From the IMG/VR virus record IMGVR_UViG_3300027759_000045, positions 248,001-312,000 of that record: 64,000 nucleotides of DNA; one strand, 5' to 3'. The notes below the pieces were generated by a model. It was not told the DNA's origin. It did not search any database and worked only from the letters and a program-made list of their open reading frames with translations. This document shows, piece after piece, positions 10,813-44,940 of this stretch. Made by a program: the position numbers and the translations under genes. The first letter of the stretch is position 1. Every line of letters starts with the position of its first letter.

Positions 10813-10815
10813 CAC

Positions 10816-12842: not shown

Positions 12843-12883
12843 AATATACCCGGTTAAATATACACTTAGTTATAAGGAAAACA

Positions 12884-13690: not shown

Positions 13691-13711
13691 AAATATTCAA
13701 GGAGACTCGCA

Positions 13712-14940: not shown

Positions 14941-15493
14941 AGATTACAAAGACCAACTGGCATACTTGCATCAAGCAGGCAAGTTTAATAACGGACATAC
15001 AGCCTATCCAATTGTCAAAGACTTTATTGAAAAATATCAGCCTACCGGTGTGTTGGACTTTGGGTGCGGGCAAGGAGGACTAATTGCCGCAATCAAAGAA
15101 CTACATCCCACCATTGAGGTTGCCGGATACGATCCTGGCAATCCGCTCTTCCAATATTTACCAAAACGCCCAATGGATACTGTAGTCAGTACAGATGCTA
15201 TAGAACACATTGAGCCTGATTACCTTGATGCTACATTACGCACCATCGATGAAAAAATGCAACGTTGTGGCTTTTTTAGAATTGCCTGTTATCCAGCAAA
15301 AAAACACCTGCCTGATGGGCGCAATGCTCATCTCATAGTTGAATCACCAGAGTGGTGGCGCAACAAAATACAAAGTATTATGGATGTTGATATTGTGTGG
15401 GAAAATATACAAGTGGTAGATAAAACATCAAAATGGCCCAATGTCAAAGGCCATAACTACGATGTTGTTGTTGTAAAACGTCAGGTCAAGTAA
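14924..15493 (+). CDS. Class I SAM methyltransferase (paralog of the upstream gene)
   Basis: VLDFGCGQG, YDPG, DAIEHIEP, NAHLIV. Confidence 0.8.
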   Translation: MTLIDKDYKDQLAYLHQAGKFNNGHTAYPIVKDFIEKYQPTGVLDFGCGQGGLIAAIKELHPTIEVAGYDPGNPLFQYLPKRPMDTVVSTDAIEHIEPDYLDATLRTIDEKMQRCGFFRIACYPAKKHLPDGRNAHLIVESPEWWRNKIQSIMDVDIVWENIQVVDKTSKWPNVKGHNYDVVVVKRQVK

Positions 15494-27408: not shown

Positions 27409-28323
27409 ATGATTCAAATTGACTTTCAAGGTGGCGCACATGGAAACTTCTTAGAATTTATTTGCAATACATTGTGTGGGCTGACCGATGATCAATTGCC
27501 GTTTAATAGTGCAGGCGCATCTCATGCAAAGAAGTATACTGGAAGAAAGACTTTTTTTTCCGATCATTATTCTTTTCTTAAAAAAGAACTGGGAGAAAAA
27601 GTTATTAGTATTCAGATTGCCGAAGATGATTTATTGCCGCTTAATCAAATTAGTTTATTAAGAGCTGGCGACCATGGATATGATAATGACTATCTTGAAA
27701 TGGACACCTACAATAAACTTAATAATGATAGTTATCGTTGGGTACTAGATAACATCATTGCCAATTTCTTTAAAGGACAAATTCAAACCAGTTACAATAA
27801 CGTTAAAGATGTGTCATGGCCCGATATACACACACTTGATGATTTTATCCTGTTGCCGGAGCATATACGTAATGAGTGTATTAATGTTCATAATTTAGAA
27901 TTATTAGAACTTAACAAAGACCATCCGGATTGTCCAAGGCACGTACTCAGAGAATTTTTTCAATTAGGATTTGAAAATCCTAGCCAACAAGGGTTTATTC
28001 AACAACAACACACAATGATTAATTATGGTAATAGACAAGTTTATATTTTTCCTTTCCGTTGTTTTTATGACACAGATTTATTCCTTGATCAAATCAAACA
28101 GATTGCTCAATGGGCGGAAATACCATATACTCAACACGATAAGATAGTCAAAATCCACAGTGAATTTTTAAAACGACAACCATACAAGCACAGTAAAATT
28201 AAATGTGATGTAATGGTGCAAGATATAATATCTAATAGACCAACAGGAAGTGCTCGAGATCTATTAGAAGAAGCGTACATAAACGCACAATTAAAAAAGC
28301 ATAATCATGAGTGCAGATATTGA
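27409..28323 (+). CDS. Sulfotransferase-like/P-loop protein with KDxSWP module
   Basis: IDFQGGAHGNFL N-terminal loop; AT-rich; module shared with 44122-44940. Confidence 0.4.
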   Translation: MIQIDFQGGAHGNFLEFICNTLCGLTDDQLPFNSAGASHAKKYTGRKTFFSDHYSFLKKELGEKVISIQIAEDDLLPLNQISLLRAGDHGYDNDYLEMDTYNKLNNDSYRWVLDNIIANFFKGQIQTSYNNVKDVSWPDIHTLDDFILLPEHIRNECINVHNLELLELNKDHPDCPRHVLREFFQLGFENPSQQGFIQQQHTMINYGNRQVYIFPFRCFYDTDLFLDQIKQIAQWAEIPYTQHDKIVKIHSEFLKRQPYKHSKIKCDVMVQDIISNRPTGSARDLLEEAYINAQLKKHNHECRY

Positions 28324-28885
28324 CATTGACTTTGCAGACCGCAGTCAACTACTTGAATTAATCCAGCACACACCTGCACGTCAAACGGTGCAAGGGCAGG
28401 CACGCAGGCACAACTCGGGTGTGTATGTAACAGACATTCCGCAGGATCCTGTGAATCGTTGTGCGGCCATCGACTACGAAGCTGCCGAACAACTGGGTTA
28501 TTTTAAAATTGACTTTTTGAACATGAGTGTTTATCAGTTGATTACCAGTCCAGAACACTATGCCACAGCAGTGGCCACAGAACCTGCTTGGTCCCAGCTG
28601 TGGCAAGAACCAGAATGGGCAAAACAACTAGCACACGTTGGCAACTATACAGACCTGCTGAGCGCAATGCGCCCGGATAGTATTCCAAGAATGGCAGCGT
28701 TTATCAGTATCATTAGGCCAGGCAAGGCACACTTGCAACGGCAGCCCTGGGACATGGTGTTTGATTCTGTGTGGGATGGTGATGAAAGTCGAGGCTACAC
28801 ATTTAAGAAAAGCCACGCAATCAGTTACGCAGCCTTGGTAGCATTACACATGAACCTGCTCAGTCCATCCGTCGCACAAGCGTAA
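28307..28885 (+). CDS. Minimal family-C (DnaE/PolIII alpha-like) polymerase catalytic domain
   Basis: DIDIDF, RRHNSG, FKIDFL, IRPG, YTFKKSHAISYA in 192 aa. Confidence 0.8.
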   Translation: MSADIDIDFADRSQLLELIQHTPARQTVQGQARRHNSGVYVTDIPQDPVNRCAAIDYEAAEQLGYFKIDFLNMSVYQLITSPEHYATAVATEPAWSQLWQEPEWAKQLAHVGNYTDLLSAMRPDSIPRMAAFISIIRPGKAHLQRQPWDMVFDSVWDGDESRGYTFKKSHAISYAALVALHMNLLSPSVAQA

Positions 28886-29237
28886 TGCTTTTGCGTTTGC
28901 CTTTTTTCAGTGCAATATCAGCAAGGCTACACACAGGACCGTGTAAGATTTCCAAGTCTTTGTTGGCAAATGTGCGTAGACAAGGACGGAATACATCCCA
29001 GTCTTTCTTTAAGAAGATATTGATGGGAATACTTCTATTGCTCTCCCACCACCAGGCATTGGCCAACTCTAGAAATCTTTGTTTCAGCACAGGGTCGTGT
29101 ATGCTGCCAAAGTCGTATATGGTGGTAACTGACACGTCTTGATTCTGCACAATGCCCACATACTCCGTGGAAGCATATACACACAGTGTAATAAAGGGGT
29201 ATTGTTCGCTGAGTTTAGTAAAGATATCATTGGCCAT
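28860..29237 (-). CDS. Conserved hypothetical protein
   Basis: 125 aa, EYVGIVQN, WWWESNRSIPINIFL; TAAATA on the minus strand upstream. Confidence 0.7.
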   Translation of the reverse strand: MANDIFTKLSEQYPFITLCVYASTEYVGIVQNQDVSVTTIYDFGSIHDPVLKQRFLELANAWWWESNRSIPINIFLKKDWDVFRPCLRTFANKDLEILHGPVCSLADIALKKGKRKSITLVRRMD

Positions 29238-29305
29238 CGGTGGTATTTATACCGTGCATTTTTGGCTAAATTTAAAGGTTATCTTTTGTCGCTAAATACA
29301 TCCAT

Positions 29306-30415
29306 ATGTATTCAACCACTGCTTACCTTTACCAACAAGTAACTCGAGTTATTGTAGTCGACACCAGTGGTGCTTATTTCAATTTGAGGTACAATCCTGT
29401 GTATGCTAAAAAACTAACAATTAACAAAGGTGTTGACAATGTGATCTTGTTTGAGTTCATCAATCAAGACGAAAAGCCTGTGAATATCACAGGCAGCACA
29501 CTGACATTTAGAATAGTTAGCCAAAATGGTGATGCGTTATTGGTTCAAAAAGAAATGGTTGTTATCAATGCACAGTATGGTCGTGCCAAAGTAACACTGA
29601 CCACTGCAGAACTTGACACAGTGCTGGCACAGCCCGCTGCCTACAGCATCATGCGAGCCAGCGGCAATCTAATAGAAGCAGTGTACACAGACGCACAATC
29701 AGGTGCCCGTGCTCCGCTTGACGTAGTAGACAGTGTGTATCCTCAGTACGTGCCCAGTGCCAATTTGACAATTCCCACAACAGAAATCACAGCTCAGGTC
29801 AGTTATGGTGGGTCCAGCAGTAGTGTATACCCCGACTGGGCACTAAATGCCGGCAGCTCAATCAACAACTACAGTCCTTACCAACCAACTGAATTCTACA
29901 GCAGTTTCATAGAACCAGTGGGTGCGGTAACCACAATACAGATGGACTTGCTTGGCTACACAGGTACAATCAAGGCCCAGGCCGCAGAAAACTATCAAAG
30001 TATCTGGTACAATGTTACAGAATCTACACAGTACTATAACAGAACTGAAACCATTTACATGAACGTGATTGGATGGCATCCGTTGTTGCGTTTGTGTTTC
30101 AACAACAGCATATACACCACCGGTACAAATGGTCAAGCAATGGGCAATCCGGGACAGGCCACTGCCACTGTGGCCAATGGCATTGTCACAGGAGTCACTG
30201 TTTCTAATCCAGGGTTTGGTTATTTGGCTCCGCCACTGATTGAGTTCGTGGGCGAAGGCGCAGGTGCTGTGGCCACTGCCAGTATATCAGGCAGTTCAAT
30301 CAGTGGCATTACCTTGATATCCGGTGGTTCCGGATACCGTCCAGTTCCTCCTACCATGCAGTCAGTACAGGTGCTTGTTTCCACCGGACGTGTGGTAAAC
30401 TTGAAGTATCGTTAA
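29306..30415 (+). CDS. Putative virion structural protein (BppU-like N-terminal Ig fold)
   Basis: INKGVDNVILFEFINQD..PVNITG; C-terminal GVTVSNPGFGY and GITLISGGSGY repeats; TAAATA upstream. Confidence 0.55.
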   Translation: MYSTTAYLYQQVTRVIVVDTSGAYFNLRYNPVYAKKLTINKGVDNVILFEFINQDEKPVNITGSTLTFRIVSQNGDALLVQKEMVVINAQYGRAKVTLTTAELDTVLAQPAAYSIMRASGNLIEAVYTDAQSGARAPLDVVDSVYPQYVPSANLTIPTTEITAQVSYGGSSSSVYPDWALNAGSSINNYSPYQPTEFYSSFIEPVGAVTTIQMDLLGYTGTIKAQAAENYQSIWYNVTESTQYYNRTETIYMNVIGWHPLLRLCFNNSIYTTGTNGQAMGNPGQATATVANGIVTGVTVSNPGFGYLAPPLIEFVGEGAGAVATASISGSSISGITLISGGSGYRPVPPTMQSVQVLVSTGRVVNLKYR

Positions 30416-30426
30416 GCCAAAACAAG

Positions 30427-30455
30427 TTGCATTGTCTTAAAAAACATGTTACAAT
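30427..30455 (+). promoter_or_regulatory. sigma70 promoter for primase
   Basis: TTGCAT-17-TACAAT. Confidence 0.65.
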
Positions 30456-30461
30456 AGTAAC

Positions 30462-31430
30462 ATGATCGACGTGTTGGCATTTTTACCAGGCAAAAGAAAA
30501 CAGTCTAGTTCTGGGTGGATTTCCTTCAACGCACCTTGTTGCGTACACACTGGCAACACACCCGATCGTCGTGGACGTGGTGGTATCAAACTGTCTGACC
30601 AGGGCTGGAGTTATCATTGTTTTAACTGTGGCTATACTGCAAGTTTTATTCTTGGACGCAATATCGGATTCAAAGCACGACGCTTGCTGGAATGGATAGG
30701 CGTTCCTGAAAACGATATCAATCAGATCAATCTTGAAAGCATGCGACATCGTAGCATGGAAGGCATGATTGAAGATCGTCAGCGTGTTTGGAATAATCTT
30801 GCACCGATTGAGTTTAACGAAGCAGAGTTGCCGCCATTTGTGGATTTTGTAACACCAGACCGATCTGAGCATTGGGCATATCTCAGGAACAGACATGTGC
30901 CAGAAGACTATCCTGTTATGGTATCGGCCGCAAACCCAACTCGTCCTAGTGTAGTGGTTCCGTTTACATACAACAATCAAGTGGTAGGTAGTACCATACG
31001 TTTCCTGGATGATCGCAATCCACGGTACATTAACGACATGCAGAAGGGCTACGTGTTTGGCATAGATCTACAGCAAGCAGGATGGCAAAATGTAATTGTG
31101 ACAGAAGGTATCTTTGACGCACTCAGTATAAGTGGTGTGGCTGTGATGCACAACGAAATCAGTGATGATCAAGCAAGACTAATACGTAGCCTAGGACGCA
31201 ATGTCGTTGTGGTCCCAGATCAAGACAAGGCAGGCGTGGCATTAATCGATCGTGCTGTGGAACTGGGATGGAGTGTAAGCATTCCGGACTGGCCACCCGG
31301 CGTTAAAGATATCAACGATGCTGTGAAACTCTGGGGCAAGTTGACAACTTTGCTAACTATTATGCAAGCAAAAGAAACCAGTAAGATCAAAATAGAACTA
31401 AGGAAACGACAACTTGTCAAACGAATATAA
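30462..31430 (+). CDS. DNA primase (zinc finger plus TOPRIM)
   Basis: APCC..YHCFNCG, VTEGIFDA, VPDQDKAG, KDIND. Confidence 0.9.
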   Translation: MIDVLAFLPGKRKQSSSGWISFNAPCCVHTGNTPDRRGRGGIKLSDQGWSYHCFNCGYTASFILGRNIGFKARRLLEWIGVPENDINQINLESMRHRSMEGMIEDRQRVWNNLAPIEFNEAELPPFVDFVTPDRSEHWAYLRNRHVPEDYPVMVSAANPTRPSVVVPFTYNNQVVGSTIRFLDDRNPRYINDMQKGYVFGIDLQQAGWQNVIVTEGIFDALSISGVAVMHNEISDDQARLIRSLGRNVVVVPDQDKAGVALIDRAVELGWSVSIPDWPPGVKDINDAVKLWGKLTTLLTIMQAKETSKIKIELRKRQLVKRI

Positions 31431-32514
31431 CAACTGGTGTCCGGAAGTTTATCGTAGTTTATATGTTGACCGGCATAATGACAATCAACTTCAAGTTGCA
31501 CCTTGTTGTCAGGCAACTATACAAACAGTGCCAGTTGAAAATTTTAATTTTAATACAAACGAGTACTTGCAGTCAATTAGGCAACAATTTGCAGATGGAA
31601 AAAAGCCACTGGCCTGTTCGAGATGCTGGCAAGATGAAAATGCTGGCAAGAAAAGTAGAAGATTAAGTGCTATAGAATTTTTTGAACTGCCAACTGAATC
31701 CGACACAGTGATATTAGAAAGTGTTGATCACAGTGCAACATGGGCATGTAATTTAGGTTGCATCATGTGTGGCCCACAGAACTCTAGCACATGGGCGACA
31801 GAACTTAATATATCACAAAAATCGTTATCGGCAATGGGTAGAAAATTTCAAAAGCAAAATAAGTTATTTGATTATTTAGATCTAACTAATGTTAAAAAAA
31901 TACATTTTAACGGCGGCGAGCCAATGCTTAACAATGATCAATTTAATATACTAAAGAGTATTGATTTATCAAATGCTTTTGTGAGTTATAACACAAACGG
32001 AACGGTGTATCCTAGTCTAGACATAATTAATTTGTGGGAAAAAACAAAATTAGTAAAATTGTTCTTTAGTGTAGACGCAACTGATACAGCATTTGAGTAT
32101 GTCAGACACCCTGGAAAATGGGATACGTTAGTTAATAATATCAACCGTATGCGTAAAGAATTACCTGGAAATATCATGTTTGGGTTTAACGTAACTGTGG
32201 GAAATTATAATGTACTTGAAATGCCACTGGTATATGAATGGTTTATGGAAAATTTATCTACAAATAGAGAAGGCGATAGTAGTGACTTTTGTTGGCAACT
32301 CGCATATAATTATAATGTAACTGATCTTTTGCCAAATATAAAACAGGAAGCAATGTCTGCACTGTCCTCAATTGATCAGTTTAGTGGACTTGTAAAAATT
32401 TTAAAATCTACAATGAATAGTCACAATGATAATTGGATACAAGGGTTGAATCAAATTGATCAGAGAAGAAACACAAGTTGGAAAAAAAGTTTGCAAATTG
32501 GAAAGTACTATTAA
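31414..32514 (+). CDS. Radical SAM protein with N-terminal twitch domain
   Basis: WCPEV..APCC, CSRCWQDE..SRR; CNLGCIMC..SSTW; GGEPML; TTG start. Confidence 0.88.
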   Translation: MSNEYNNWCPEVYRSLYVDRHNDNQLQVAPCCQATIQTVPVENFNFNTNEYLQSIRQQFADGKKPLACSRCWQDENAGKKSRRLSAIEFFELPTESDTVILESVDHSATWACNLGCIMCGPQNSSTWATELNISQKSLSAMGRKFQKQNKLFDYLDLTNVKKIHFNGGEPMLNNDQFNILKSIDLSNAFVSYNTNGTVYPSLDIINLWEKTKLVKLFFSVDATDTAFEYVRHPGKWDTLVNNINRMRKELPGNIMFGFNVTVGNYNVLEMPLVYEWFMENLSTNREGDSSDFCWQLAYNYNVTDLLPNIKQEAMSALSSIDQFSGLVKILKSTMNSHNDNWIQGLNQIDQRRNTSWKKSLQIGKYY

Positions 32515-32517
32515 ACA

Positions 32518-33957
32518 ATGTTAAAAGATTATGGATTAGAAGTCCAGAGATTATTCTTAGAAATGATGTTGGAAGACGCCAGCAGTTATGTGCGTGTTCA
32601 AAACATTTATAATCCACAAAACTTTGACCGGAGCCTGCAGCCGGCGGCTGAGTTCATTAAAGAGCACACGGACAAGCATAAAACTATGCCTGACAAGTTG
32701 CAGATTAGTGCAACTACAGGAATCAAACTGCAACCTGTGCCAGATTTGAACGAAGGACACTTTGATTGGTTCATGACCGAGTTTGAAGGCTTTACCAAGC
32801 GTCAAGAACTTGAACGTGCTATTCTTAAAAGTGCAGACTTGTTAGAAAAGGGAGAGTTTGAGCCAGTTGAGAAACTGATCAAAGACGCAGTACAGATATC
32901 TCTTACAAAAGACATGGGCACAGATTACTTTGCTGATCCTGCGAGTCGTATCAACCGATACTTTAACTCAGGCGGCCAAGTAAGCACAGGATGGCCACAA
33001 CTAGACCGGCTGTTGTATGGTGGATTCAGTCGTGGTGAACTGAACATCTTTGCAGGCGGATCTGGTTCGGGTAAAAGTTTAGTAATGATGAACATTGCGT
33101 TGAACTGGCTACAGCAAGGACTTAGTGGTGTGTACGTTACACTAGAACTCAGTGAAGAACTTACCAGTTTACGTACAGATGCTATGTTGACCAATATGTC
33201 AACAAAGGATATCCGTAAAGACATTGACACAACTGAACTCAAAGTTAAACTAGTTGCTAAGAAGTCTGGCCAGTATCGTGTTAAGGCATTACCGGCGCAA
33301 AGCAACATTAACGACATCCGTAGTTATATCAAAGAAGTACAGATCCAAACAGGGATCCGAGTAGACTTCCTGATGATTGACTATTTGGACTTGCTAATGC
33401 CAGTTAGTGCTAAAGTTAGCCCCAACGACTTGTTTGTTAAAGACAAGTATGTTTCAGAAGAACTGCGTAACTTAGCCAAGGAACTGGGTGTGCTGATGGT
33501 TACTGCATCGCAGTTAAATCGTAGTGCTGTTGAAGAGATTGAATTTGACCACAGTCATATTTCAGGCGGTATCAGTAAAATTAACACAGCAGATAATGTG
33601 TTTGGTATCTTTACTTCACGTGCTATGAAAGAACGTGGCAAGTATCAGATCCAGTGTATGAAATCTCGAAGCTCGACCGGCGTTGGTCAAAAAATTGATT
33701 TGGAGTATAACATTGAAACTATGCGCATTACTGATGAAGGTGGGGACGAAGGGACAGGGTACAACCGACCCCAAAGTTCACTTATGGACTCAATCAAAGC
33801 AAAAAGCCAACTCAAGTCTGCTGACACCACAGAAGACAAATCCCCACCGTGGGAAAAAGCCACAGGAACTCCTGCTTGGGAACAGCCAGCAAAAGTAACA
33901 GGCGATGTGCAAAGTGCTAAATTAAAACAACTGCTCGGTCAGATTAAAAATACTTAA
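32518..33957 (+). CDS. gp41: Replicative DnaB-like helicase (gp41)
   Basis: GGSGSGKS, VTLEL, IDYLDL, TASQLNR, MKSRSS. Confidence 0.93.
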   Translation: MLKDYGLEVQRLFLEMMLEDASSYVRVQNIYNPQNFDRSLQPAAEFIKEHTDKHKTMPDKLQISATTGIKLQPVPDLNEGHFDWFMTEFEGFTKRQELERAILKSADLLEKGEFEPVEKLIKDAVQISLTKDMGTDYFADPASRINRYFNSGGQVSTGWPQLDRLLYGGFSRGELNIFAGGSGSGKSLVMMNIALNWLQQGLSGVYVTLELSEELTSLRTDAMLTNMSTKDIRKDIDTTELKVKLVAKKSGQYRVKALPAQSNINDIRSYIKEVQIQTGIRVDFLMIDYLDLLMPVSAKVSPNDLFVKDKYVSEELRNLAKELGVLMVTASQLNRSAVEEIEFDHSHISGGISKINTADNVFGIFTSRAMKERGKYQIQCMKSRSSTGVGQKIDLEYNIETMRITDEGGDEGTGYNRPQSSLMDSIKAKSQLKSADTTEDKSPPWEKATGTPAWEQPAKVTGDVQSAKLKQLLGQIKNT

Positions 33958-33961
33958 GATA

Positions 33962-35035
33962 TTAACATTCTATTAGCATATTATGTAATTCAGGCAAATA
34001 ATCTTTCATCTGAATTTTTTTAGATGTATCTTGTATTTTAATTTGTTCAAGCATCATTTGAAAATTTTGTTGATCTTGGTTGGTGTGTATTGGTCCTAAG
34101 AAAGTATTATAATCAACTGCAGATAATTGACTTTTTAATAATTTCTTAATTGATTCTGACAGTGCTCTAGGCTGTAACCAACTTGGATTATATACCGGGC
34201 TTACCGAGTACACTATATTATTTTCATTAAACCATTTGATGGTTTTGTTATGATATAAAATATTTAAATTGCTCAATGTGTAATTTGAACTAATATTGTC
34301 AGTTAATTCTCGAAAAAATGTTAGATTGTTAGTAAGATCTGTCCAGTCAAGTGGATATCTCATGTATTCAAATACAGATTCTATTCCGTCGATGCTGACA
34401 GAAAAATTAAGATTCTTAAATTTTGATAAGACTTGTTTTTGCCTGGAAGTTAATTCTACACTGCCGTTAGTTACTATACTCAAAAATACTTCAGTATTTC
34501 CCAATTCAACAAGATATTTTAATAACTCAAAATTTTTCTTTTCATACAAAGGTTCACCGCCGATTAGACTTAATATTTTAAGTTCTTTAAAATTAACTTT
34601 TTCTTTTATCTTGTCTATATCAACAAATTTATTTGAGTTTGGCGGAATATCTAAATCAATGCGCTTGGCCAACTGTGCCCAACTGCTACTACAGTTAGGG
34701 CTACAGCTTATACAAGTTGCATTACAAGTATTACTGGTAAACAATTTGAGAATTAAGATATCATTTAATTTGCCGTTGGTTGCATCTTGTTTTATAGATT
34801 CTAGATCCCTATCCCAATAAAAATCTAATGCACTATTTTTTACTTGTCGATCACTTTTTGATCCATATTCTTCAAGATTCCAACATTTTTGACACGCCGA
34901 ACTTTTAACTCCTGATAACAAGTCTGATTTAATTTGATCAATGTTGTAATTTCGAGGTAGTAAACAGCAATGTGTTTCTTGGCCATTCCAAACTACTTCT
35001 TTTCCTACCCAGGGTAAAACACAAAATGTATCCAT
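33962..35035 (-). CDS. Radical SAM protein with N-terminal twitch domain
   Basis: FCVLPW..THCC, CQKCW..E..SDR; CNATCISC..SSSW; GGEPLY; very AT-rich. Confidence 0.88.
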   Translation of the reverse strand: MDTFCVLPWVGKEVVWNGQETHCCLLPRNYNIDQIKSDLLSGVKSSACQKCWNLEEYGSKSDRQVKNSALDFYWDRDLESIKQDATNGKLNDILILKLFTSNTCNATCISCSPNCSSSWAQLAKRIDLDIPPNSNKFVDIDKIKEKVNFKELKILSLIGGEPLYEKKNFELLKYLVELGNTEVFLSIVTNGSVELTSRQKQVLSKFKNLNFSVSIDGIESVFEYMRYPLDWTDLTNNLTFFRELTDNISSNYTLSNLNILYHNKTIKWFNENNIVYSVSPVYNPSWLQPRALSESIKKLLKSQLSAVDYNTFLGPIHTNQDQQNFQMMLEQIKIQDTSKKIQMKDYLPELHNMLIEC

Positions 35036-35097
35036 CTTTTATTTAAGTATAATGTATGTTAGAATCAAATAAATAACACAAAGGGTTCGGGACCAAA

Positions 35098-35346
35098 ATG
35101 CAGAAGAAAACTCGTAGTTTATTAGAAGAATTAGACAGCATGTATGTGGAGCGCGACTCCCGCTATGTTATCGAAAATCGTGCTGGTAACATCATAGCCA
35201 GTGCTATACGCCTGCTAGAGCAGATTGACTCCAGTTATGAGCCCGAGGTGGCTAAAAATTTGCAACGAAAGTTGATCAATGCTATCAACCTACGCGACCC
35301 TGGCAAATTTACAAGAACCGTGAGAAAAACTGATGCAAATTCATGA
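35098..35346 (+). CDS. Small hypothetical late protein
   Basis: 82 aa; TAAATA at 35070-35075. Confidence 0.7.
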   Translation: MQKKTRSLLEELDSMYVERDSRYVIENRAGNIIASAIRLLEQIDSSYEPEVAKNLQRKLINAINLRDPGKFTRTVRKTDANS

Positions 35347-38685: not shown

Positions 38686-38706
38686 ACCTGATTTTTTGTC
38701 AACTTG

Positions 38707-38714
38707 TATAAATA
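38707..38714 (+). promoter_or_regulatory. T4-late-like promoter TATAAATA (representative of many TAAATA boxes)
   Basis: TAAATA also just upstream of genes at 62, 911, 4367, 6436, 12855, 18939, 19672, 29293, 35070, 39225, 39907, 41895, 46920, 53153, 60690. Confidence 0.75.
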
Positions 38715-38755
38715 ATTGCAGGTCCAACGTGACCATATACTAAGGAGATTTAAAA

Positions 38756-39166
38756 ATGGCTTATATTACACAAGTAAACGGCAACTTCGAACCAGTTGTT
38801 AATCAAGACTCAGGCACAGTTGCCGCATCACCTGGCGCAGGCTGGAACAGTGGTGCTAACACAGTGACCAGTGGCACAACAGTTAACGTTGCAGGCCCTA
38901 AGTTAGACTTCGGTACAGTTACTTTCACTGGTAACGCTACTGTAAGTGGTACTTCATTGGGACAAGCATTCTTGACAATTCAGACACAATGCACAATTGC
39001 TATGTACGAATTCACAACCAACAGTAGTAACACTGCTACATTGGCTCTGGCTACATACCCAACTGGTGCATGGAACTATGCTAACGGTCAAGATCTAGAC
39101 GTGGCATTGACTGCCGCTCTAGGCTATGCTGTTACCACAGCTGCCACAGCAACATTCACAAACTGA
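38756..39166 (+). CDS. Thr/Ala-rich small virion protein (possible decoration protein)
   Basis: Strong AAGGAG RBS, late promoter, own terminator. Confidence 0.55.
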   Translation: MAYITQVNGNFEPVVNQDSGTVAASPGAGWNSGANTVTSGTTVNVAGPKLDFGTVTFTGNATVSGTSLGQAFLTIQTQCTIAMYEFTTNSSNTATLALATYPTGAWNYANGQDLDVALTAALGYAVTTAATATFTN

Positions 39167-39186
39167 TCTAAACAGTTTTTGAAACA

Positions 39187-39219
39187 AAAACCCTGGAATA
39201 AAACCCAGGGTTTTCTTTT
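39187..39219 (+). terminator. Rho-independent terminator
   Basis: AAAACCCTGG-loop-CCAGGGTTTT followed by CTTTT. Confidence 0.8.
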
Positions 39220-39237
39220 GACGTTAAATACTTCATC

Positions 39238-39492
39238 ATGATGGTGAGCAAAATAACTGAAGTAACAATATTTGAAAGCCCCGATGGTGGCCGCACAGTG
39301 TATGCTCGCCAACCTGGCAGTAGCGCAAGATCCTTGCACTATCAAGACCCCAAACTAAAACAAGAACTAGAAGATCTTGAAAACAAACGTCGTTGGGCAG
39401 AAATATTTGAATCACGTCACAACAGTGTAGCACTCAACGAACTATGCAACAAAGTTGAAGTGTTATACGAACTAATTAAAAAGACGCCATGA
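39238..39492 (+). CDS. Hypothetical protein
   Basis: IFESPDGGRTVYAR motif; TAAATA upstream. Confidence 0.65.
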   Translation: MMVSKITEVTIFESPDGGRTVYARQPGSSARSLHYQDPKLKQELEDLENKRRWAEIFESRHNSVALNELCNKVEVLYELIKKTP

Positions 39493-39938
39493 GATTTGTA
39501 GTACAAACATTCTTTGACATCACTGCCACCGGCGTCACAGGACATTATAAACCTGCCCGGGTGCCGTTCCGAGATCACGCAGGCAATGTAATAACCGACG
39601 AGTTAGACTGGGGTCGTGCTAGAAATCAACAAAGAAACTGGGAAACACTCACACAAATACTGGGACTACGTACACAGTTGTTCCGCATACAAGAACCCAT
39701 GGTGGATGCATCAAATCGTGCATGGATGTTTGAATTTGAAACAGAAACTGACAACATCTACGGCACAGATGATGATTTAACCTTGGTACTACGTGCAGAT
39801 GCCGAAGGTGTGCCCATGCTGTTAGGACTGGACAATAGACCAGAAATGTCCACTGTGCTGATTACACATGGCCCCCAACAGAACATATGGTTCGCTCCGA
39901 TCGCCATAAATAATGCATTGGAGACCCAACATGGTTGA
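39489..39938 (+). CDS. Hypothetical protein
   Basis: 149 aa, ATGA overlap, RNQQRNWETL. Confidence 0.65.
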   Translation: MRFVVQTFFDITATGVTGHYKPARVPFRDHAGNVITDELDWGRARNQQRNWETLTQILGLRTQLFRIQEPMVDASNRAWMFEFETETDNIYGTDDDLTLVLRADAEGVPMLLGLDNRPEMSTVLITHGPQQNIWFAPIAINNALETQHG

Positions 39939-40194
39939 TACCACTGCTATTGAGAAAAAAAGTCTAGAAGCACACGTAGAACTGTGTGCAGAACGTTATA
40001 GTCAATTGGAACTGCGGTTAGATAACGTAGACTCTAAAATTGCCAGCCTGGAACAGATGGTTGCACAGATACGTGATATGGTCAGAGACATGGCTGCCAA
40101 ACGCAACGACCAATTGATTTCATGGGGTCTAGGTGCAATGGGCTCAATGGCCGCGGTCATTGGATGGCTGCTTGTGACTTATGTTTTTAAATGA
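39931..40194 (+). CDS. Coiled-coil protein with C-terminal transmembrane helix (XhlA/holin-like topology)
   Basis: GGAGA RBS; heptad stretch followed by WGLGAMGSMAAVIGWLLVTYVF. Confidence 0.5.
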   Translation: MVDTTAIEKKSLEAHVELCAERYSQLELRLDNVDSKIASLEQMVAQIRDMVRDMAAKRNDQLISWGLGAMGSMAAVIGWLLVTYVFK

Positions 40195-40688
40195 AAATAG
40201 ATAAAGAAATTTCTCGAGAAATCCTTAAAGAATTCCCCACACTAGAACACAACAGTATCTGGAAAAATTCTGATGGCGACTACACAGTATTTGGAAAATA
40301 CAGTATTGTCAAAGAAAGTCAAGGCTACCGAGTACACTGTGCCTTAACTGATGTTGGCGTTTTTCACACTACTAAATCAGCATTGAGTTGGTGCATTGCC
40401 GACAAATTTAAACAATACAATGTGGCCCGCGATTTAATGCAGTTAGACAACAGTTTACATCATTTAACCGTGGATATCGGCACCAGAGCCGCCATTGGTG
40501 ATCGCACCAAAAATGCTGATCAACGTGAAATCATTCTAACCAAGTTAGAAAATAAGATTTTAAAGAAAAAAGAAATAGAAAATAGATTAGCCAAATGTGT
40601 GAATTGGGCTAAATATTATCAACAACGAGGATTCGATAATGAAACTGCAAGAATTGGCCGTACTGCCGCAATCAAAACAAGTCGCTAA
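40191..40688 (+). CDS. Hypothetical protein
   Basis: 165 aa, coupled by overlap. Confidence 0.65.
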   Translation: MKIDKEISREILKEFPTLEHNSIWKNSDGDYTVFGKYSIVKESQGYRVHCALTDVGVFHTTKSALSWCIADKFKQYNVARDLMQLDNSLHHLTVDIGTRAAIGDRTKNADQREIILTKLENKILKKKEIENRLAKCVNWAKYYQQRGFDNETARIGRTAAIKTSR

Positions 40689-41529
40689 AGTATTCGAAAG
40701 TTACTTTGGTAAAAGCATTACCTTTGAATCAATTTCAAAGCGTCAAGCACATGCCATGTTAGGCCGTGTGCGTGGCTTACTGGGCGAACATCGCCGTACA
40801 CCTGCATTCCATAAGAGCGAACAAGATTCAGCATACTTGAAATTAGTAATGCTAGAGCAGGTGTTGGCTAAAAAAATCAAAGAAGAGATTCCAGCGAACA
40901 CAACAATGGGAATGCCAGATCCTAACAAAACAAAACAAGCTCTCAGTAAGATCACTGATCCTAAACTCAAGTCAGCAATGACCAAGAGTGCTGCCGGTCA
41001 AACGCTGTCACCAGACGAACAAAAGATGGTACAAGGTGCCGCATTATCTGCCGCCATGGCCGCTGAAAGTCGTCGTAAAACAGGCCGTCGATTAGCCGAG
41101 AGCGAAGTACAACAAGCACAGGTTATCTTGGCCAGTCAAGACATGGTTGATCAAGTTCAGCGCATGATTGAACAAGTTACTTCTATTCAGTTCAAAGATT
41201 TGCCAGCCTTGGTTGATCAAATCCGTAACGAAATTGGCTATGACCAAGCTACCAAATTCAATGCAGATGCCACAGCCGCACTGGGCGGAATGGTACAGAA
41301 CCTACAGCAATCTAAGATTCAATTAGAAACTGCCATGGGCACAGTGACCGGACAAGCACCTGTGGTTCCGGGCGAAGTGGCTCCTGATGTTGGTGCAGAA
41401 ATGCCTCCAATGGACGCTGGTGCAGAAATGCCTGCTGAACCCGGTGATGAACTAGATGCACTGGCTGCCGATGCAGAAGCAGACCTCGAAGAGCCTGTTA
41501 AAACTGGACTAGGTCGCGAGCGTAGATAA
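40639..41529 (+). CDS. Putative head scaffold/internal protein
   Basis: MKLQEL start, RRLAESEV, acidic Pro-rich tail, ends LGRERR. Confidence 0.5.
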   Translation: MKLQELAVLPQSKQVAKVFESYFGKSITFESISKRQAHAMLGRVRGLLGEHRRTPAFHKSEQDSAYLKLVMLEQVLAKKIKEEIPANTTMGMPDPNKTKQALSKITDPKLKSAMTKSAAGQTLSPDEQKMVQGAALSAAMAAESRRKTGRRLAESEVQQAQVILASQDMVDQVQRMIEQVTSIQFKDLPALVDQIRNEIGYDQATKFNADATAALGGMVQNLQQSKIQLETAMGTVTGQAPVVPGEVAPDVGAEMPPMDAGAEMPAEPGDELDALAADAEADLEEPVKTGLGRERR

Positions 41530-41870
41530 TGCGCCTACGAGAGTTTGACGAGTCTGCCAACAGCGCCCTTAAACTAGCGGCGCTGAGTCAGTTTCTCAGC
41601 GACAGAGCTGAAGACGAAGCAGCCTCAAAACAAATTAGTCAAGCAGCCTTTGTTGACTTGGCACAGTCAATGGGTGTTAACGTAACTGAACAGAACCTAG
41701 GTGACATGATCAGCCGTGAACCATTGAGCAACTTGCTTGAACCACTTGAGCCAAATTCGGGTGTGGTTAGATTCAAAGGCAACACCGAAGCCACAACAGG
41801 CATGAGTGTTGATCAAGCACGTGAAGTTGTTGACAGCAATGCCAAAGCAGCCTTGAAGCGTCGCCAATAA
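41529..41870 (+). CDS. Hypothetical head-associated protein
   Basis: MRLREF start; 113 aa. Confidence 0.5.
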   Translation: MRLREFDESANSALKLAALSQFLSDRAEDEAASKQISQAAFVDLAQSMGVNVTEQNLGDMISREPLSNLLEPLEPNSGVVRFKGNTEATTGMSVDQAREVVDSNAKAALKRRQ

Positions 41871-41907
41871 AACACTCTCGCCAGACACTGGCATTAAATA
41901 TCGCTAC

Positions 41908-42801
41908 ATGACACAAAAAATCTTGATTGACAAGTTAGAATTCTACATCACCAACGTGTGTAACTTAACTTGCAACGGCTGTAATCGCTACAACAATTAT
42001 AAATTCAGCGGATGGCAAAGTTGGGCAGAAGCCGAACCTGTTCTCACTCGCTGGGCAGAAAAAATAGACATACGACATCCTGTAATCCTTGGTGGCGAGC
42101 CACTGCTTAATCCTGACATTGTTAAATGGATTAACGGTATTAGGCAATTGTGGCCCAAGCATTCGGGAGTTCAAGTGCAAAGCAACGGAACACGCATCGA
42201 CTGCGTTAAAGGGTTAGATGAGGCTCTTAATCCTAAAGAGGGAAACTGGTTGGGCATTAGTATACACAATCCCAATGACCGAGAAGAAATATTTGCTCGT
42301 GTACGAAACTTCTTAGGACCTACTGTAATAGAAACACAACGCAAAGATGATCCAATTGGTAGCAATTATCAATTTATTAATGATAAAAAATTAACAATCC
42401 ACGCCTGGATGAGCAACAAGTTTGTTCAAAGCAATATTATTGAACTTCCAGACAACAAGTACACACTGTATCAGAGTGATCCTACACGGGCACACGAAAA
42501 CTGTACCTTCCGTAGATTTAAAAACTATCACATGATCAATGGGAAAATCTACAAGTGCGGTCCAGCCGCTCTAATGCCCGAATTTGATGATCAATACCAT
42601 TTTGAAATAAGCGATGAGGATCGTGCTATGCTACACAGCTATCGACCGTTGACCATTGATGAGTTTGATCTACGTGGCAAAGAGTTTATTGACACGATTG
42701 ATAACCAAATTGATCAATGCAAGTTTTGCCCAGAATCATACGAATACAAACCCATCACATTCAGTGATCGTAAAAAACCCTGGATAAAAGAACCAAAATG
42801 A
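41908..42801 (+). CDS. Radical SAM protein with C-terminal twitch-like Cys cluster
   Basis: ITNVCNLTCNGC, GGEPLL, SNGT; C-terminal NC..GKIYKC..CKFC. Confidence 0.88.
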   Translation: MTQKILIDKLEFYITNVCNLTCNGCNRYNNYKFSGWQSWAEAEPVLTRWAEKIDIRHPVILGGEPLLNPDIVKWINGIRQLWPKHSGVQVQSNGTRIDCVKGLDEALNPKEGNWLGISIHNPNDREEIFARVRNFLGPTVIETQRKDDPIGSNYQFINDKKLTIHAWMSNKFVQSNIIELPDNKYTLYQSDPTRAHENCTFRRFKNYHMINGKIYKCGPAALMPEFDDQYHFEISDEDRAMLHSYRPLTIDEFDLRGKEFIDTIDNQIDQCKFCPESYEYKPITFSDRKKPWIKEPK

Positions 42802-42858
42802 TAGTAAATACATGCAGAATGTAGTATAATACATTTAATGTATGCAAAGGATACAAAG

Positions 42859-43155
42859 ATGAAAAAAATTCTTTTAGTCGTATTAATGACAATCGCAACA
42901 GCCGCATTTGCACAACACGGACACTTTAACCGTCACTACCATGGCGGGCATTGGCAACGTGGGCACAGCGGCAATTGGGTTTGGATGGTCCCTGCAATCA
43001 TTGGAGGTGCAATTGTATACGAAGCATCACGACAGGCACCACCGCAACCTGTAATTATTCAACAGCAACAGTCTGTTGACACAAATTGTAGCCCTTGGAC
43101 AGAAATACAAAATCCAGACGGCACAATAACCAGAACAAGAACTTGTACAAAGTAA
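42859..43155 (+). CDS. Secreted His/Gly-rich small protein
   Basis: Signal MKKILLVVLMTIATAAFA; hydrophobic segment; CSPW..RTC. Confidence 0.6.
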   Translation: MKKILLVVLMTIATAAFAQHGHFNRHYHGGHWQRGHSGNWVWMVPAIIGGAIVYEASRQAPPQPVIIQQQQSVDTNCSPWTEIQNPDGTITRTRTCTK

Positions 43156-43195
43156 TTGTAAATCAGTAAATTAAAACAGAAAGTAGTAGCAGTAT

Positions 43196-43399
43196 ATGGC
43201 ATTAGGTAAAGTAAAGTGGTTTAATGAAACCAAAGGTTTTGGGTTTATTACTCCAGACGAAGGTGGCGAAGAATTGTTTGCACACTATTCAGCAATTCAA
43301 ACGCAAGGCTTCAAAGTCCTCAAAGAAAATCAACGTGTGACATACGATGTGGTTCAAGGACAAAAGGGCCTGCAGGCATCTAACATTAAACCAGAGTAA
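43196..43399 (+). CDS. cspA: Cold-shock domain protein
   Basis: [23 protein letters not shown]. Confidence 0.95.
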
Positions 43400-43405
43400 A
43401 CACAC

Positions 43406-43798
43406 ATGTCTTACAGCAAAAAGGTGGTCGATCACTATGAAAATCCCAGGAATGTCGGATCTTTTGACAAGACTGATACTGATATTGGTACTGGTATGGT
43501 TGGCGCACCTGCTTGCGGGGATGTCATGAAATTACAAATAAAGGTTGATAATGATACAGGTATTATTACAGATGCAAAATTTAAAACGTATGGCTGCGGA
43601 TCGGCTATTGCGAGCTCGAGCCTTATTACAGAGTGGGTCAAAGGCATGCACATCGACCAAGCAGGAGCAATCAAAAACTCCGACATCGCTGAAGAATTGG
43701 CCTTACCCCCCGTGAAGATACATTGTAGCATTCTAGCCGAAGACGCAATCAAAGCGGCTGTGGACGACTATCGTAAGAAGCATGATCTCGTTAACTGA
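43406..43798 (+). CDS. iscU: Fe-S cluster scaffold IscU
   Basis: YENPRNVG, GAPACGD, GCGSAIAS, LPPVKIHCS. Confidence 0.96.
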   Translation: MSYSKKVVDHYENPRNVGSFDKTDTDIGTGMVGAPACGDVMKLQIKVDNDTGIITDAKFKTYGCGSAIASSSLITEWVKGMHIDQAGAIKNSDIAEELALPPVKIHCSILAEDAIKAAVDDYRKKHDLVN

Positions 43799-44102
43799 TG
43801 CTGCCGCTCGAAAAATACAACAAACAATAACTCGGCGTGGGCACGGTGAAGGAATAAGATTAGGTGTTAGAACCACTGGGTGTTCTGGACTTGCTTATGT
43901 GTTAGAATATGTGGATACACCGCAAGCAACAGATCAATGTTTTGACTGTACTGGTTGCCGAGTGTTTGTTGATCCCAAGTCTGGTGCTTACTTACAAGGT
44001 GTAACAGTTGACTATGTTCGCCAAGGGCTCAATGAAGGTTTTGAATTTCGCAATCCAAATGAACGTGATCGGTGTGGATGTGGAGAAAGTTTCCGTATTT
44101 AA
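43782..44102 (+). CDS. iscA: A-type Fe-S carrier IscA
   Basis: GCSGLAY, FRNPN, CGCGESF. Confidence 0.95.
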   Translation: MISLTDAAARKIQQTITRRGHGEGIRLGVRTTGCSGLAYVLEYVDTPQATDQCFDCTGCRVFVDPKSGAYLQGVTVDYVRQGLNEGFEFRNPNERDRCGCGESFRI

Positions 44103-44121
44103 AAGCCTCTAGACTAATAGT

Positions 44122-44940
44122 ATGAATTATTATTTTGAACCTGCTCCTTATCTTTCGTTAAATTTAAATCTAAAAACAGAATTGTCTAATTTAGATAGAA
44201 GCAAGTTAACAATTGCAGATGCAGCATTATATGACATGGATCCTGTGAGATTAAGTAACATAGTAGAAAACATTTATTCTGATGAAAAACAATGTTTTTT
44301 TGATTTTTACGGTGATAACTTTACTAATCTAGCATCATGCACCACCTGGTATCTGCCAGAGAAATTGGAAAAATTGTTACTCAGTGAGTATGAGTATTTT
44401 TTTAATTTAATCAACGAAGCTCCTGAAATACGATTACAAGCAATGACTGGTGTTCAATTGCCTGTGCATGTTGATCGTCATAGAACTGTAAGTATCATAC
44501 TTCCATTGAAGAATCATTCAAATACATGGACAAAATTTTATGATCACGACATTGATATTCTCCACTGGAACAACCACTATTCAAACAGCAAGGATCAGTC
44601 TTGGCCCGAATGCAAAACACTCTGGGATTTTAACTTTCTTCCCGAGTTCGTAAAACAAGAATTGCTTGAAAATGCACACACTCATACACTGTTAACTGAA
44701 GGTATTCGTCGTCAACGAATACCACCCTTAGTTAATCCAACCCAGACAACTGAAGTTTGCGAAGTTGAAATTGATAAATTTCCTTATATACTCAATGTTG
44801 ATAAATGCCACAGTGTTTACTGTCCTGACGCACCCACTGATGAGAATCCCCGCTTGGCAGTATTTTTCAAGTGGCGAGAAATTAAATTTACTCAAGTATT
44901 AGATGCTTATAATCAATTTGTCAAATTTAAAATTAATTAA
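44122..44940 (+). CDS. 2OG-Fe(II) oxygenase-like protein with inserted KDxSWP module
   Basis: PVHVD (HxD), distal KCHSV, PRLAVF. Confidence 0.5.
   Translation: MNYYFEPAPYLSLNLNLKTELSNLDRSKLTIADAALYDMDPVRLSNIVENIYSDEKQCFFDFYGDNFTNLASCTTWYLPEKLEKLLLSEYEYFFNLINEAPEIRLQAMTGVQLPVHVDRHRTVSIILPLKNHSNTWTKFYDHDIDILHWNNHYSNSKDQSWPECKTLWDFNFLPEFVKQELLENAHTHTLLTEGIRRQRIPPLVNPTQTTEVCEVEIDKFPYILNVDKCHSVYCPDAPTDENPRLAVFFKWREIKFTQVLDAYNQFVKFKIN

What the first reader, a model, noticed from the sequence alone, without database searches (positions are those of the whole stretch)
27793..44661. A ~28-aa KDxSWP module shared by two unrelated tailoring enzymes
Seen: YNNVKDVSWPDIHTLDDFILLPEHIRNE (27793-27876, sulfotransferase-like protein) aligns without gaps to YSNSKDQSWPECKTLWDFNFLPEFVKQE (44578-44661, 2OG-like protein), 15 of 28 identical, while the rest of the two proteins is unrelated. 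In the 2OG-like protein it sits between the HxD and distal His. Inference: a mobile plug-in domain that targets diverse modifying enzymes to a common substrate or scaffold. This is the best in-sequence evidence that the scattered enzymes form one system. I do not know a named family for it.
Basis: seen in the sequence. Interest (0 to 1): 0.76.

Follow-up and report, generated by a model that had tools for sequence, protein, structure and literature searches.

The report
Phage-only plug-in mini-domain on enzymes
The shared stretch is real: it is an undescribed 40-45-residue helical mini-domain, found almost only in uncultured aquatic phages, that has been spliced into the ends or surface loops of at least 17 unrelated families of modifying enzymes. 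What it binds is still unknown.

Summary
The 304-aa protein (window 27409-28323, sulfotransferase-like fold) and the 272-aa protein (44122-44940, JmjC/cupin 2OG-oxygenase fold) share only a ~40-aa stretch (BLASTP E 3e-7).

The stretch is a true domain. Its consensus is W-x2-F-Y-x2-[IV]-[KR]-D-x-S-W-P-[DE]-C-x4-[DE]-F-x2-L-P-x2-I-[QK]-x-E-[C/I/L]. In both models it folds as helix, WP loop, short helix, LP turn, helix.

- **Copies here:** the 347-kb phage genome holds five copies, in five otherwise unrelated proteins.
- **Spread:** a profile search of 1.84 billion proteins finds 694 clusters.
- **Position:** the domain sits N-terminally, internally, C-terminally, in tandem, or alone.
- **Partners:** radical SAM enzymes, methyltransferases, Asp/Asn hydroxylases, amidinotransferase-like, GDSL, DUF6492 and unknown enzymes.
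- **Module-less relatives:** they exist within the same families, including a radical SAM gene in this window.
- **Range:** 108 viral contigs match a strict pattern, against one 2.5-kb MAG contig among species-representative prokaryote genomes.
- **Known families:** no Pfam, NCBIfam, PHROG or PDB family matches.

The "plug-in domain" reading is well supported. The "targeting" role is plausible but unproven. The "one system" inference is not supported. My best guess is a portable docking or recognition module (confidence about 0.45).

The parts
27409..28323 (+). Gene A, 304 aa. Sulfotransferase-like fold carrying the module internally. It belongs to a large, unnamed metagenomic family (489 clusters).
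   Evidence: ORF. Homologues. AF2 model pLDDT 93.9. Only sulfotransferases among the structural matches, Z up to 8.0.
27778..27915 (+). Module copy in A (residues ~124-169): helix 124-130, WP loop 131-142, helix 143-147, LP turn, helix 151-160.
   Evidence: Profile hit E 6.5e-21. DSSP on the model. W137 and P138 are invariant in 66 homologues.
44122..44940 (+). Gene B, 272 aa. JmjC/cupin-type 2OG-Fe(II) oxygenase-like protein carrying the module inside the jelly roll.
   Evidence: 17 homologues. AF2 pLDDT 90.8. Foldseek matches to TYW5, PHF8, JMJD5, FIH and KanJ.
44557..44694 (+). Module copy in B (residues ~146-191), in the insert between strands 136-142 and 209-216.
   Evidence: Profile hit E 4.8e-16. 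DSSP. W149, Y153, W161, P162, C164 and E180 are invariant.
44467..44475 (+). H116-V-D118, the predicted metal-binding HxD of B.
   Evidence: H116 and D118 are invariant in the family alignment.
44809..44811 (+). H230, the predicted distal metal-binding histidine of B.
   Evidence: Invariant. It lies on strand 229-233.
41908..42801 (+). Radical SAM gene that is a module-less member of a family which carries the module at ~147-191 in other phages.
   Evidence: BLASTP E 9e-52 in two blocks flanking the module site. The alignment shows a gap or unrelated residues exactly at the module. Pfam Radical_SAM.
44947..46230 (+). Radical SAM gene directly downstream of B. It is related to the family with an N-terminal fused module but lacks the module itself, and it is absent at this place in relatives.
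   Evidence: BLASTP E 9e-10 to cluster 4, aligned from residue 58 onward. Relatives lack it.
31414..32514 (+). Radical SAM gene, also related to the N-terminal-module family but without the module.
43406..44102 (+). IscU/NifU-like and IscA-like Fe-S assembly genes directly upstream of B. This neighbourhood is conserved in relatives.
   Evidence: Pfam NifU_N E 1.8e-54. Fe-S_biosyn E 1.2e-18. Synteny.

Best explanation
The shared stretch is an independently folding, non-catalytic, acidic mini-domain of about 40-45 residues (three short helices around a WP loop and an LP turn). It is confined to phages and has been shuffled as a cassette onto many unrelated modification enzymes. I think it most likely works as a portable docking or recognition module. 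It would bind one conserved partner (a macromolecular substrate, a carrier or scaffold protein, or part of the phage machinery) and so bring whichever enzyme carries it to that partner. It appears able to act fused in cis or as a separate small protein in trans. Shown here: the domain exists, it is independent of the host fold, it is present or absent within single enzyme families, and it is restricted to phages. Inferred: that it binds something, and that the partner is common to all carriers.
For: 1. Fold independence. The only similarity between carriers is the module. Carriers include radical SAM, class I methyltransferases, Asp_Arg_Hydrox, DUF6492, GDSL, amidinotransferase-like, a PF01555 methylase-like protein, a sulfotransferase-like fold and a JmjC-like fold.
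2. Any position. It occurs N-terminally, internally, C-terminally and in tandem pairs.
3. Stand-alone complete genes exist: P0161 (104 aa), and P0144 (106 aa, two modules), whose gene overlaps the start of a radical SAM/SPASM gene. That radical SAM is homologous to a family with the module fused at its N-terminus.
4. Module-less members occur inside the same families: the window radical SAM at 41908, and amidinotransferase-like homologues in S-SCSM2R, CPt10 and marine virus AG-345-D19, where other sequence fills the same site.
5. Where the host fold is understood, the module sits where variable substrate-recognition inserts normally sit. In B this is the insert between the fourth and fifth jelly-roll strands. 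In a PF01555 methylase-like protein it lies between DPPF and FCGTGT, the usual target-recognition position. That these sites serve recognition is textbook knowledge, not tested here.
6. Selection acts on the peptide. The five genomic copies differ at synonymous sites. Y8, W16, P17, L28, P29 and E35 are about 100% conserved, and K/R12, D13, D/E24 and Q/K33 are conserved across all host families.
7. Different module-bearing enzymes replace each other in the same slot between uvsX and gene 32 homologues in T4-like contigs.
Against: No partner was identified. Module copies in one genome are no more alike than copies from different genomes (mean z -0.2, 15 pairs), so there is no sign of co-adaptation to a genome-specific partner. 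Several phages carry only one copy. Module-less orthologues evidently function without it. Most of the best-conserved positions are hydrophobic or aromatic and could be purely structural. The insertion sites may simply be the loops that tolerate insertions. I had no atomic coordinates or predicted-error maps, so surface exposure and distance to the active sites were not measured.
Confidence: 0.45

Rival explanations
1. The module is a self-association or assembly element. Modules bind each other, giving homodimers, or hetero-complexes of the enzymes that carry it within one phage.
For: Small helical modules often dimerise (general knowledge). This genome has five carriers. Tandem copies and adjacent carrier genes occur.
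Against: Many genomes have a single carrier. Mean net charge is about -3.7, which disfavours self-association. There is no intragenomic similarity signal.
Confidence: 0.15
2. The module is a ligand-binding lid for a shared small-molecule or glycan scaffold, for example a cationic amino or guanidino sugar. It would contribute aromatic and acidic side chains next to each active site.
For: Conserved aromatics (W4, Y8, W16, F25) and acidic positions (D13, D/E18, D/E24, E35). Sugar-type neighbours are common: NDP-sugar epimerase, DegT-like and cytidylyltransferase genes beside a carrier. KdsA and KdsB lie beside the module-less cyanophage homologue. An APS kinase and a further sulfotransferase-like gene lie beside carriers C and E. 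KanJ is among the fold matches of B. There is a weak glycosyltransferase-10 lead for the largest host family.
Against: Terminal, tandem and stand-alone copies are hard to reconcile with an active-site lid. No ligand-binding family matches.
Confidence: 0.15
3. The module is a localisation or packaging tag that takes enzymes to the virion or another phage structure.
For: Module-less homologues of two carrier families (an amidinotransferase and a 2OG oxygenase) were detected in the purified virion proteome of Synechococcus phage S-SCSM2R (PMC12801897). The module is phage-restricted.
Against: Those virion-associated proteins lack the module, so it is not needed for that association. An internal position inside folded domains is unusual for a packaging signal. 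Oxygen-sensitive radical SAM enzymes are unlikely virion cargo (inference).
Confidence: 0.1
4. The module is a selfish in-frame insertion with no function for the enzyme, like Rickettsia palindromic elements that insert into coding genes.
For: Presence/absence polymorphism within enzyme families, and insertion at permissive loops.
Against: There is no conservation at the DNA level beyond what the peptide requires: serine and proline codons differ between copies. Residue conservation across hundreds of clusters is strong. Copies are old and are inherited with each host family. Terminal and stand-alone forms exist.
Confidence: 0.05

Closest known systems
RiPP recognition element (RRE, PqqD-like domain)
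   Same: It is a small non-catalytic domain found fused to, or encoded next to, many unrelated tailoring enzymes (radical SAM/SPASM, methyltransferases and others), and it directs them to one substrate. The arrangement 'N-terminal module + radical SAM' versus 'separate small gene + radical SAM/SPASM' seen here mirrors fused RRE versus PqqD plus PqqE.
   Different: An RRE is 85-100 residues with a three-stranded sheet and three helices. This module is 40-45 residues, all-helical, and has no Pfam hit. No precursor peptide was found. The one weak Nif11-like hit upstream of a radical SAM gene (E 0.005) has no plausible core peptide.
UBM ubiquitin-binding motif of DNA polymerase iota and Rev1 (also UBA- and GA-type three-helix mini-domains)
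   Same: The second half of the module (F-x2-L-P-x2-[IV]-Q-x-E-[LIC]) resembles the UBM helix, Leu-Pro turn, helix. The best five of the seven PDB profile hits are Pol iota UBM1 and UBM2. The size class and non-catalytic adaptor nature are similar.
   Different: The E-values (0.1-1.4) are not significant. The N-terminal half (W-x2-F-Y-x2-I-K-D-x-S-W-P) has no UBM counterpart. There is no Pfam UBM hit, and no evidence of any ubiquitin-like partner.
Dockerins and PKS/NRPS docking domains
   Same: Short portable modules that attach diverse enzymes to a common scaffold or to each other.
   Different: Dockerins are about 70 residues with duplicated calcium-binding loops and sit at termini. This module has no such motifs and often lies inside the host fold.
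LysM and PG_binding_1 polymer-binding modules
   Same: Modules of about 45-60 residues attached at either end of many unrelated enzymes, tethering them to one polymer.
   Different: There is no sequence or secondary-structure match (LysM is beta-alpha-alpha-beta). The carriers here are cytoplasmic-type tailoring enzymes, not lysins.
Rickettsia palindromic elements (in-frame mobile DNA)
   Same: A short segment found inserted in frame into unrelated genes.
   Different: Here conservation is in the peptide, not the DNA, and it is ancient.

Membership tests
RiPP recognition element (PqqD-like) | 85-100 residue winged helix-turn-helix with a three-stranded beta-sheet | tested here: not met
   The module is 40-45 residues, and DSSP shows helices only in both models.
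RiPP recognition element (PqqD-like) | Sequence match to PqqD/RRE profiles | tested here: not met
   No such Pfam family appears for A, B or among the 25 families most often matched by 126 carriers.
RiPP recognition element (PqqD-like) | Adjacent precursor peptide bound through its leader | tested here: inconclusive
   There is only a weak Nif11 hit (E 0.005, below cut-off) for window 41529-41870, which has no Cys or GG core. Binding is not testable here.
UBM (ubiquitin-binding motif) | About 30-residue helix, Leu-Pro turn, helix | tested here: inconclusive
   An invariant L28-P29 lies between two helices. PDB profile hits to Pol iota UBM1/2 reach only E 0.1-1.4.
UBM (ubiquitin-binding motif) | Binds ubiquitin or a ubiquitin-like protein | not testable with these tools
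   No binding assay is available.
Sulfotransferase fold (protein A) | Overall fold of PAPS-dependent sulfotransferases | tested here: inconclusive
   All 50 top VIA-align rows are sulfotransferases covering residues 1-299, but Z is only 6.8-8.0 and Foldseek E is at least 0.045. Atlas feature hits are sulfotransferase fragments at 0.64-0.75, a lead only.
Sulfotransferase fold (protein A) | Match to sulfotransferase sequence profiles and PAPS-binding motifs | tested here: not met
   No Pfam or NCBIfam hit. An N-terminal strand plus glycine-rich loop (QGGAHGN) is present, but it was not mapped onto the PAPS-binding loop.
2OG-Fe(II)/JmjC cupin oxygenases (protein B) | Double-stranded beta-helix fold | tested here: met
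   Foldseek matches to TYW5, PHF8, JMJD5, FIH, KanJ and P4H, E 1.7e-4 to 1e-3, probability up to 1.0.
2OG-Fe(II)/JmjC cupin oxygenases (protein B) | HxD/E...H metal triad | tested here: met
   H116, D118 and H230 are invariant in 17 homologues.
2OG-Fe(II)/JmjC cupin oxygenases (protein B) | Match to a curated sequence family | tested here: not met
   No Pfam, NCBIfam or PHROG hit.
In-frame mobile DNA repeat (RPE-like) | Copies conserved at nucleotide level, beyond what the peptide requires | tested here: not met
   The five copies differ at synonymous positions; only codon positions fixed by W, P, D and Y are invariant.
Metal- or disulfide-dependent mini-domain | Invariant cysteine or histidine ligands | tested here: not met
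   C19 (83%) and C36 (62%) alternate with I, V and L. H40 alternates with F and Y.

The most novel reading that the evidence does not exclude
The module is the common handle of an unrecognised, phage-wide modification system. It would bind one conserved phage or host macromolecule, such as nascent phage DNA machinery, a virion protein or a carrier protein. Aquatic T4-like and jumbo phages could then swap tailoring enzymes (radical SAM, methyl-, sulfo-, amidino- and glycosyl-transferases, hydroxylases) in and out of hot spots such as the uvsX-gene 32 slot, diversifying one target in an arms race. Finding the partner would then give a function to hundreds of phage enzyme families that currently have none.
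Probability: 0.25. Interest if true: 0.85.

Novelty: new variant of a known kind. Interest (0 to 1): 0.66.

Why it matters
Large aquatic phages carry arrays of radical SAM enzymes, oxygenases, methyltransferases and similar enzymes whose substrates are unknown. The radical SAM and amidinotransferase cluster of Campylobacter phage CPt10 is a cultured example.

A single small domain shared by at least 17 such families, and by about 700 protein clusters, gives one experimental handle. Pull down whatever binds the module and you may learn what all these enzymes act on. The module also provides a specific sequence marker for phage origin in metagenomes, and a clean natural case of domain insertion into folded enzymes.

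Tried and rejected
- **The search for related loci with the five-copy alignment** failed: no conserved 7-10 column block. It was replaced by a degenerate DNA pattern.
- **Cultured phages (GenBank set).** tblastn with a 42-aa module, protein A and the largest host family found nothing. Protein D matched only through its hydroxylase domain.
- **PHROGs, NCBIfam and Pfam** have no family for the module.
- **ESM Atlas searches** gave no usable lead for the module itself.
- **Literature searches** for the motif strings and for the gene combination found no description.
- **Metal or disulfide site:** rejected, because both cysteine positions alternate with aliphatic residues.
- **Recent DNA repeat or gene conversion:** rejected.
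- **B acting in trans with the radical SAM gene downstream of it:** rejected, because that gene is absent at this place in relatives.
- **RiPP precursor upstream of the radical SAM at 41908:** there is only a sub-threshold Nif11 hit, and the sequence has no core-like tail.
- **P0140 and P0200**, with nine partial matches each, are repeat proteins that match only the F-x2-L-P-x2-V part. I treated them as false positives.
Full report
**1. The observation**

The two quoted peptides are translated exactly as written. They lie in a 304-aa ORF (window 27409-28323, protein A) and a 272-aa ORF (44122-44940, protein B).
- BLASTP extends the match to 39 residues (19 identical, E 3e-7) and finds nothing else in common.
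- AlphaFold2 models are confident: A has pLDDT 93.9 and B has 90.8.
- A resembles only sulfotransferases. All 50 best VIA-align rows are sulfotransferases, with Z up to 8.0 over residues 1-299. This is a modest score, and Foldseek alone is weak.
- B is a JmjC/cupin 2OG-oxygenase fold, matching TYW5, PHF8, JMJD5, FIH and KanJ at E 1.7e-4 to 1e-3.
- In B, H116-x-D118 and H230 are invariant. The module (about residues 146-191) sits between them, in the insert between strands 136-142 and 209-216.

So the observation, the two fold labels and the stated position are all correct.

**2. It is a domain, not a coincidence**

The window lies in a single 346,856-bp virus record. Its helicase is most like those of PA5oct- and Atu_ph07-type jumbo phages.

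A six-frame profile search of the whole genome finds exactly five carriers, all at E 3e-21 to 5e-16. The next hit is at E 0.3. The five carriers are:
- protein A;
- protein B;
- a GDSL/SGNH-like protein (genome 40042-40890);
- an Asp/Asn beta-hydroxylase-family protein with the module at its very N-terminus (genome 108061-108867, minus strand);
- a 261-aa protein of unknown family (genome 38623-39408).

Profile comparisons align nothing but the module between them. At the DNA level the copies differ at synonymous sites, so it is the peptide that is conserved.

**3. Distribution**

A profile of the five copies was run against 1.84 billion representative proteins. It gave 694 clusters at E <= 0.001 and 51 at E <= 1e-10.

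The module occurs at N-termini, inside proteins, at C-termini and as tandem pairs. After masking the module, the 268 carriers I could collect fall into 48 groups, 17 of them with several members.

Partner domains found:

| Partner | Evidence |
|---|---|
| Radical_SAM (at least two families) | |
| Several class I methyltransferase families | |
| Asp_Arg_Hydrox, DUF6492, GDSL | |
| A PF01555 methylase-like protein | |
| A family related to phage 'glycine amidinotransferases' | |

The largest host family has no Pfam match and is virus-only in the ESM Atlas.

Consensus from 151 copies: W-x2-F-Y-x2-[IV]-[KR]-D-[P]-S-W-P-[DE]-C-x4-[DE]-F-x2-L-P-x2-I-[QK]-x-E-[C/I/L]-x3-[HF].
- Y, W-P, L-P and E are about 100% conserved.
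- Both cysteine positions alternate with I, V and L, so they are buried core positions, not ligands.
- Mean net charge is -3.7.
- In both models the module forms a helix, a loop carrying W-P, a short helix, the L-P turn and a final helix.

**4. Plug-in behaviour**

Several observations show that the module comes and goes within single enzyme families.
- The window's own radical SAM gene (41908-42801) is a clear member (E 9e-52, 35-39% identity) of a family that carries the module at about 147-191 elsewhere. The alignment shows the module replaced by a gap and a few unrelated residues.
- Amidinotransferase-like homologues lack the module in marine virus AG-345-D19, Campylobacter phage CPt10 and Synechococcus phage S-SCSM2R. 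Other sequence, or none, fills the same site, and none of those three records holds a module anywhere.
- Complete stand-alone genes exist. P0161 is 104 aa. P0144 is 106 aa with two modules, and its gene overlaps the start of a radical SAM/SPASM gene. That enzyme is related to a family in which the module is fused N-terminally. This is a fusion/fission pair, which suggests the module can work in trans.
- In T4-like contigs, the slot between uvsX and gene 32 homologues holds different module-bearing enzymes in different phages.

**5. Restriction to phages**

| Search | Result |
|---|---|
| Strict back-translated pattern, viral contigs | 108 contigs |
| Same pattern, 596 Gb of species-representative prokaryote genomes | 1 contig |
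| Profile, 400 further genomes of the same phylum as that MAG | none |
| Cultured phages in GenBank, with the queries tried | none |

The one prokaryote match is a 2.5-kb contig in a Legionella MAG. Its neighbouring genes belong to families seen in 22-25 of the viral loci, so it is probably a mis-binned phage fragment. The MAG has no other copy.

Other jumbo phages hold one or two copies. Record names of close relatives suggest lake metagenomes; that is my inference.

**6. What it is not**

- No Pfam, NCBIfam or PHROG family covers it.
- A profile search of PDB sequences gives only non-significant hits (E 0.1-1.4) to the UBM motifs of DNA polymerase iota. These share the F-x2-L-P-x2-[IV]-Q-x-E-L helix-turn-helix with the module's second half. 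This is a lead, not a membership.
- It is too short and too helical to be an RRE.
- It is not a DNA-level repeat.
- It is not a metal site.
- Copies within one genome are no more alike than copies of the same family pairs from different genomes (mean z -0.2, n = 15). This argues against recent spread, gene conversion or genome-specific co-adaptation.

**7. How it most likely works**

The behaviour is that of a non-catalytic binding module:
- it is independent of the host fold;
- it occurs in tandem;
- it can be a separate protein;
- where the host fold is understood, it occupies the variable insert that usually contributes substrate recognition. These are the jelly-roll insert in B, and the region between motif IV (DPPF) and motif I (FCGTGT) in a PF01555-type methylase-like protein. 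The role of those sites is textbook knowledge and was not tested here.

I therefore favour a portable docking or recognition domain that brings diverse enzymes to one conserved partner (confidence 0.45).

What the partner is remains open. The available hints point in three directions:
- **Glycan or sugar-nucleotide tailoring.** An epimerase, DegT-like and cytidylyltransferase genes lie beside one carrier. KdsA and KdsB lie beside the module-less cyanophage homologue. An APS kinase and another sulfotransferase-like gene lie beside two carriers in this genome.
- **DNA-directed enzymes.** One carrier is the PF01555-like protein. In T4, as I recall, beta-glucosyltransferase lies next to uvsX, the same kind of slot as the variable one described above.
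- **Virion proteins.** Module-less homologues of two carrier families were found in the S-SCSM2R virion proteome (PMC12801897).

Rival readings are self-association, a ligand-binding lid, a packaging tag and a functionless selfish insertion. They are listed separately with their tests.

**8.

'Targeting to a common substrate or scaffold' is the best current guess, but it is unproven.

'Best evidence that the scattered enzymes form one system' does not follow. The module is a widespread phage domain, the five carriers here are dispersed, and single-copy genomes exist. B's adjacency to a radical SAM gene is not conserved. What is conserved next to B is an IscU/IscA pair.

**9. Novelty**

This is an undescribed domain family of considerable size. 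Its principle, a promiscuous adaptor domain on tailoring enzymes, is known from RREs, dockerins and similar modules. Its fold class, its restriction to phages and its frequent insertion inside folded domains are different.

Noticed in passing
window 43406-44102, with radical SAM genes at 31414-32514, 33962-35035 (minus strand), 41908-42801 and 44947-46230: The phage encodes its own Fe-S assembly pair: IscU/NifU_N (E 1.8e-54) and IscA-type Fe-S_biosyn (E 1.2e-18). At least four radical SAM genes lie within 15 kb. The IscU-IscA-B order is conserved in relatives.
   Followed up: partly
L001 (genome 30001-48000): 6108-7085, 7082-7708, 11941-12801, 14833-15858: Beside module carriers C and E lie a TctC-like solute-binding protein, a Sulfotransfer_3-like protein, an APS kinase (the enzyme that makes the sulfate donor PAPS) and a carbonic-anhydrase-like protein. 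This suggests a phage-encoded sulfation pathway.
   Followed up: partly
viral loci such as L005, L008, L010, L039, L092: In T4-like contigs, the interval between the uvsX and gene 32 (single-strand DNA-binding protein) homologues is a variable slot. In different phages it holds different module-bearing enzymes: DUF6492-like, amidinotransferase-like, or the large unknown family.
   Followed up: partly
L019:2879-3091 and ten other loci (family f16): A small protein lies directly upstream of the radical SAM genes that have an N-terminal module. It has a hypervariable Ser/Thr/Gly/Asn-rich N-terminal part and a strongly conserved helical C-terminal part (...DADIEING.SL....IE.RLNIL.PN.ELE.EW.EL..LG..YR.LE...). 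It might be a substrate or a structural protein.
   Followed up: no
window 41529-41870: A 113-aa ORF directly upstream of the radical SAM gene at 41908 gives a sub-threshold Nif11 (RiPP leader-type) hit: E 0.005, 17.5 bits against a cut-off of 23.8. The sequence has no Cys-rich or Gly-Gly core, so this is probably chance.
   Followed up: partly
L120 (Campylobacter phage CPt10, 72603-79376): A cultured phage carries an array of five radical SAM genes around a module-less amidinotransferase-like gene. This is the same enzyme combination as in the module-bearing aquatic phages.
   Followed up: no
L003 / L125 (contig 217 of a Legionella MAG, 2472 bp): This is the only prokaryote-genome match. Its three neighbouring genes belong to families found in 9 to 25 of the viral loci, so it looks like a phage fragment binned into the MAG.
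   Followed up: partly
window 28307-28885: A 192-aa ORF overlapping the end of gene A matches only a PHROG annotated as DNA polymerase (phrog_11778, E 3.9e-52) and has no Pfam hit. It may be a piece of a split polymerase gene.
   Followed up: no
window 46949-48529: A 526-aa protein has a pectate-lyase-like (Pect-lyase_RHGA_epim) domain, a likely tailspike or depolymerase. It is conserved downstream of B in relatives.
   Followed up: no
L112 (254-kb metagenomic contig), 7054-17092: One amidinotransferase-like carrier lies among genes for an NDP-sugar epimerase, a DegT-like fragment, GTP cyclohydrolase I, HIT, PTPS/QueD, a B12-binding radical SAM enzyme, a phosphoribosyltransferase and a cytidylyltransferase. 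This mixes sugar-type and 7-deazaguanine-type genes.
   Followed up: no
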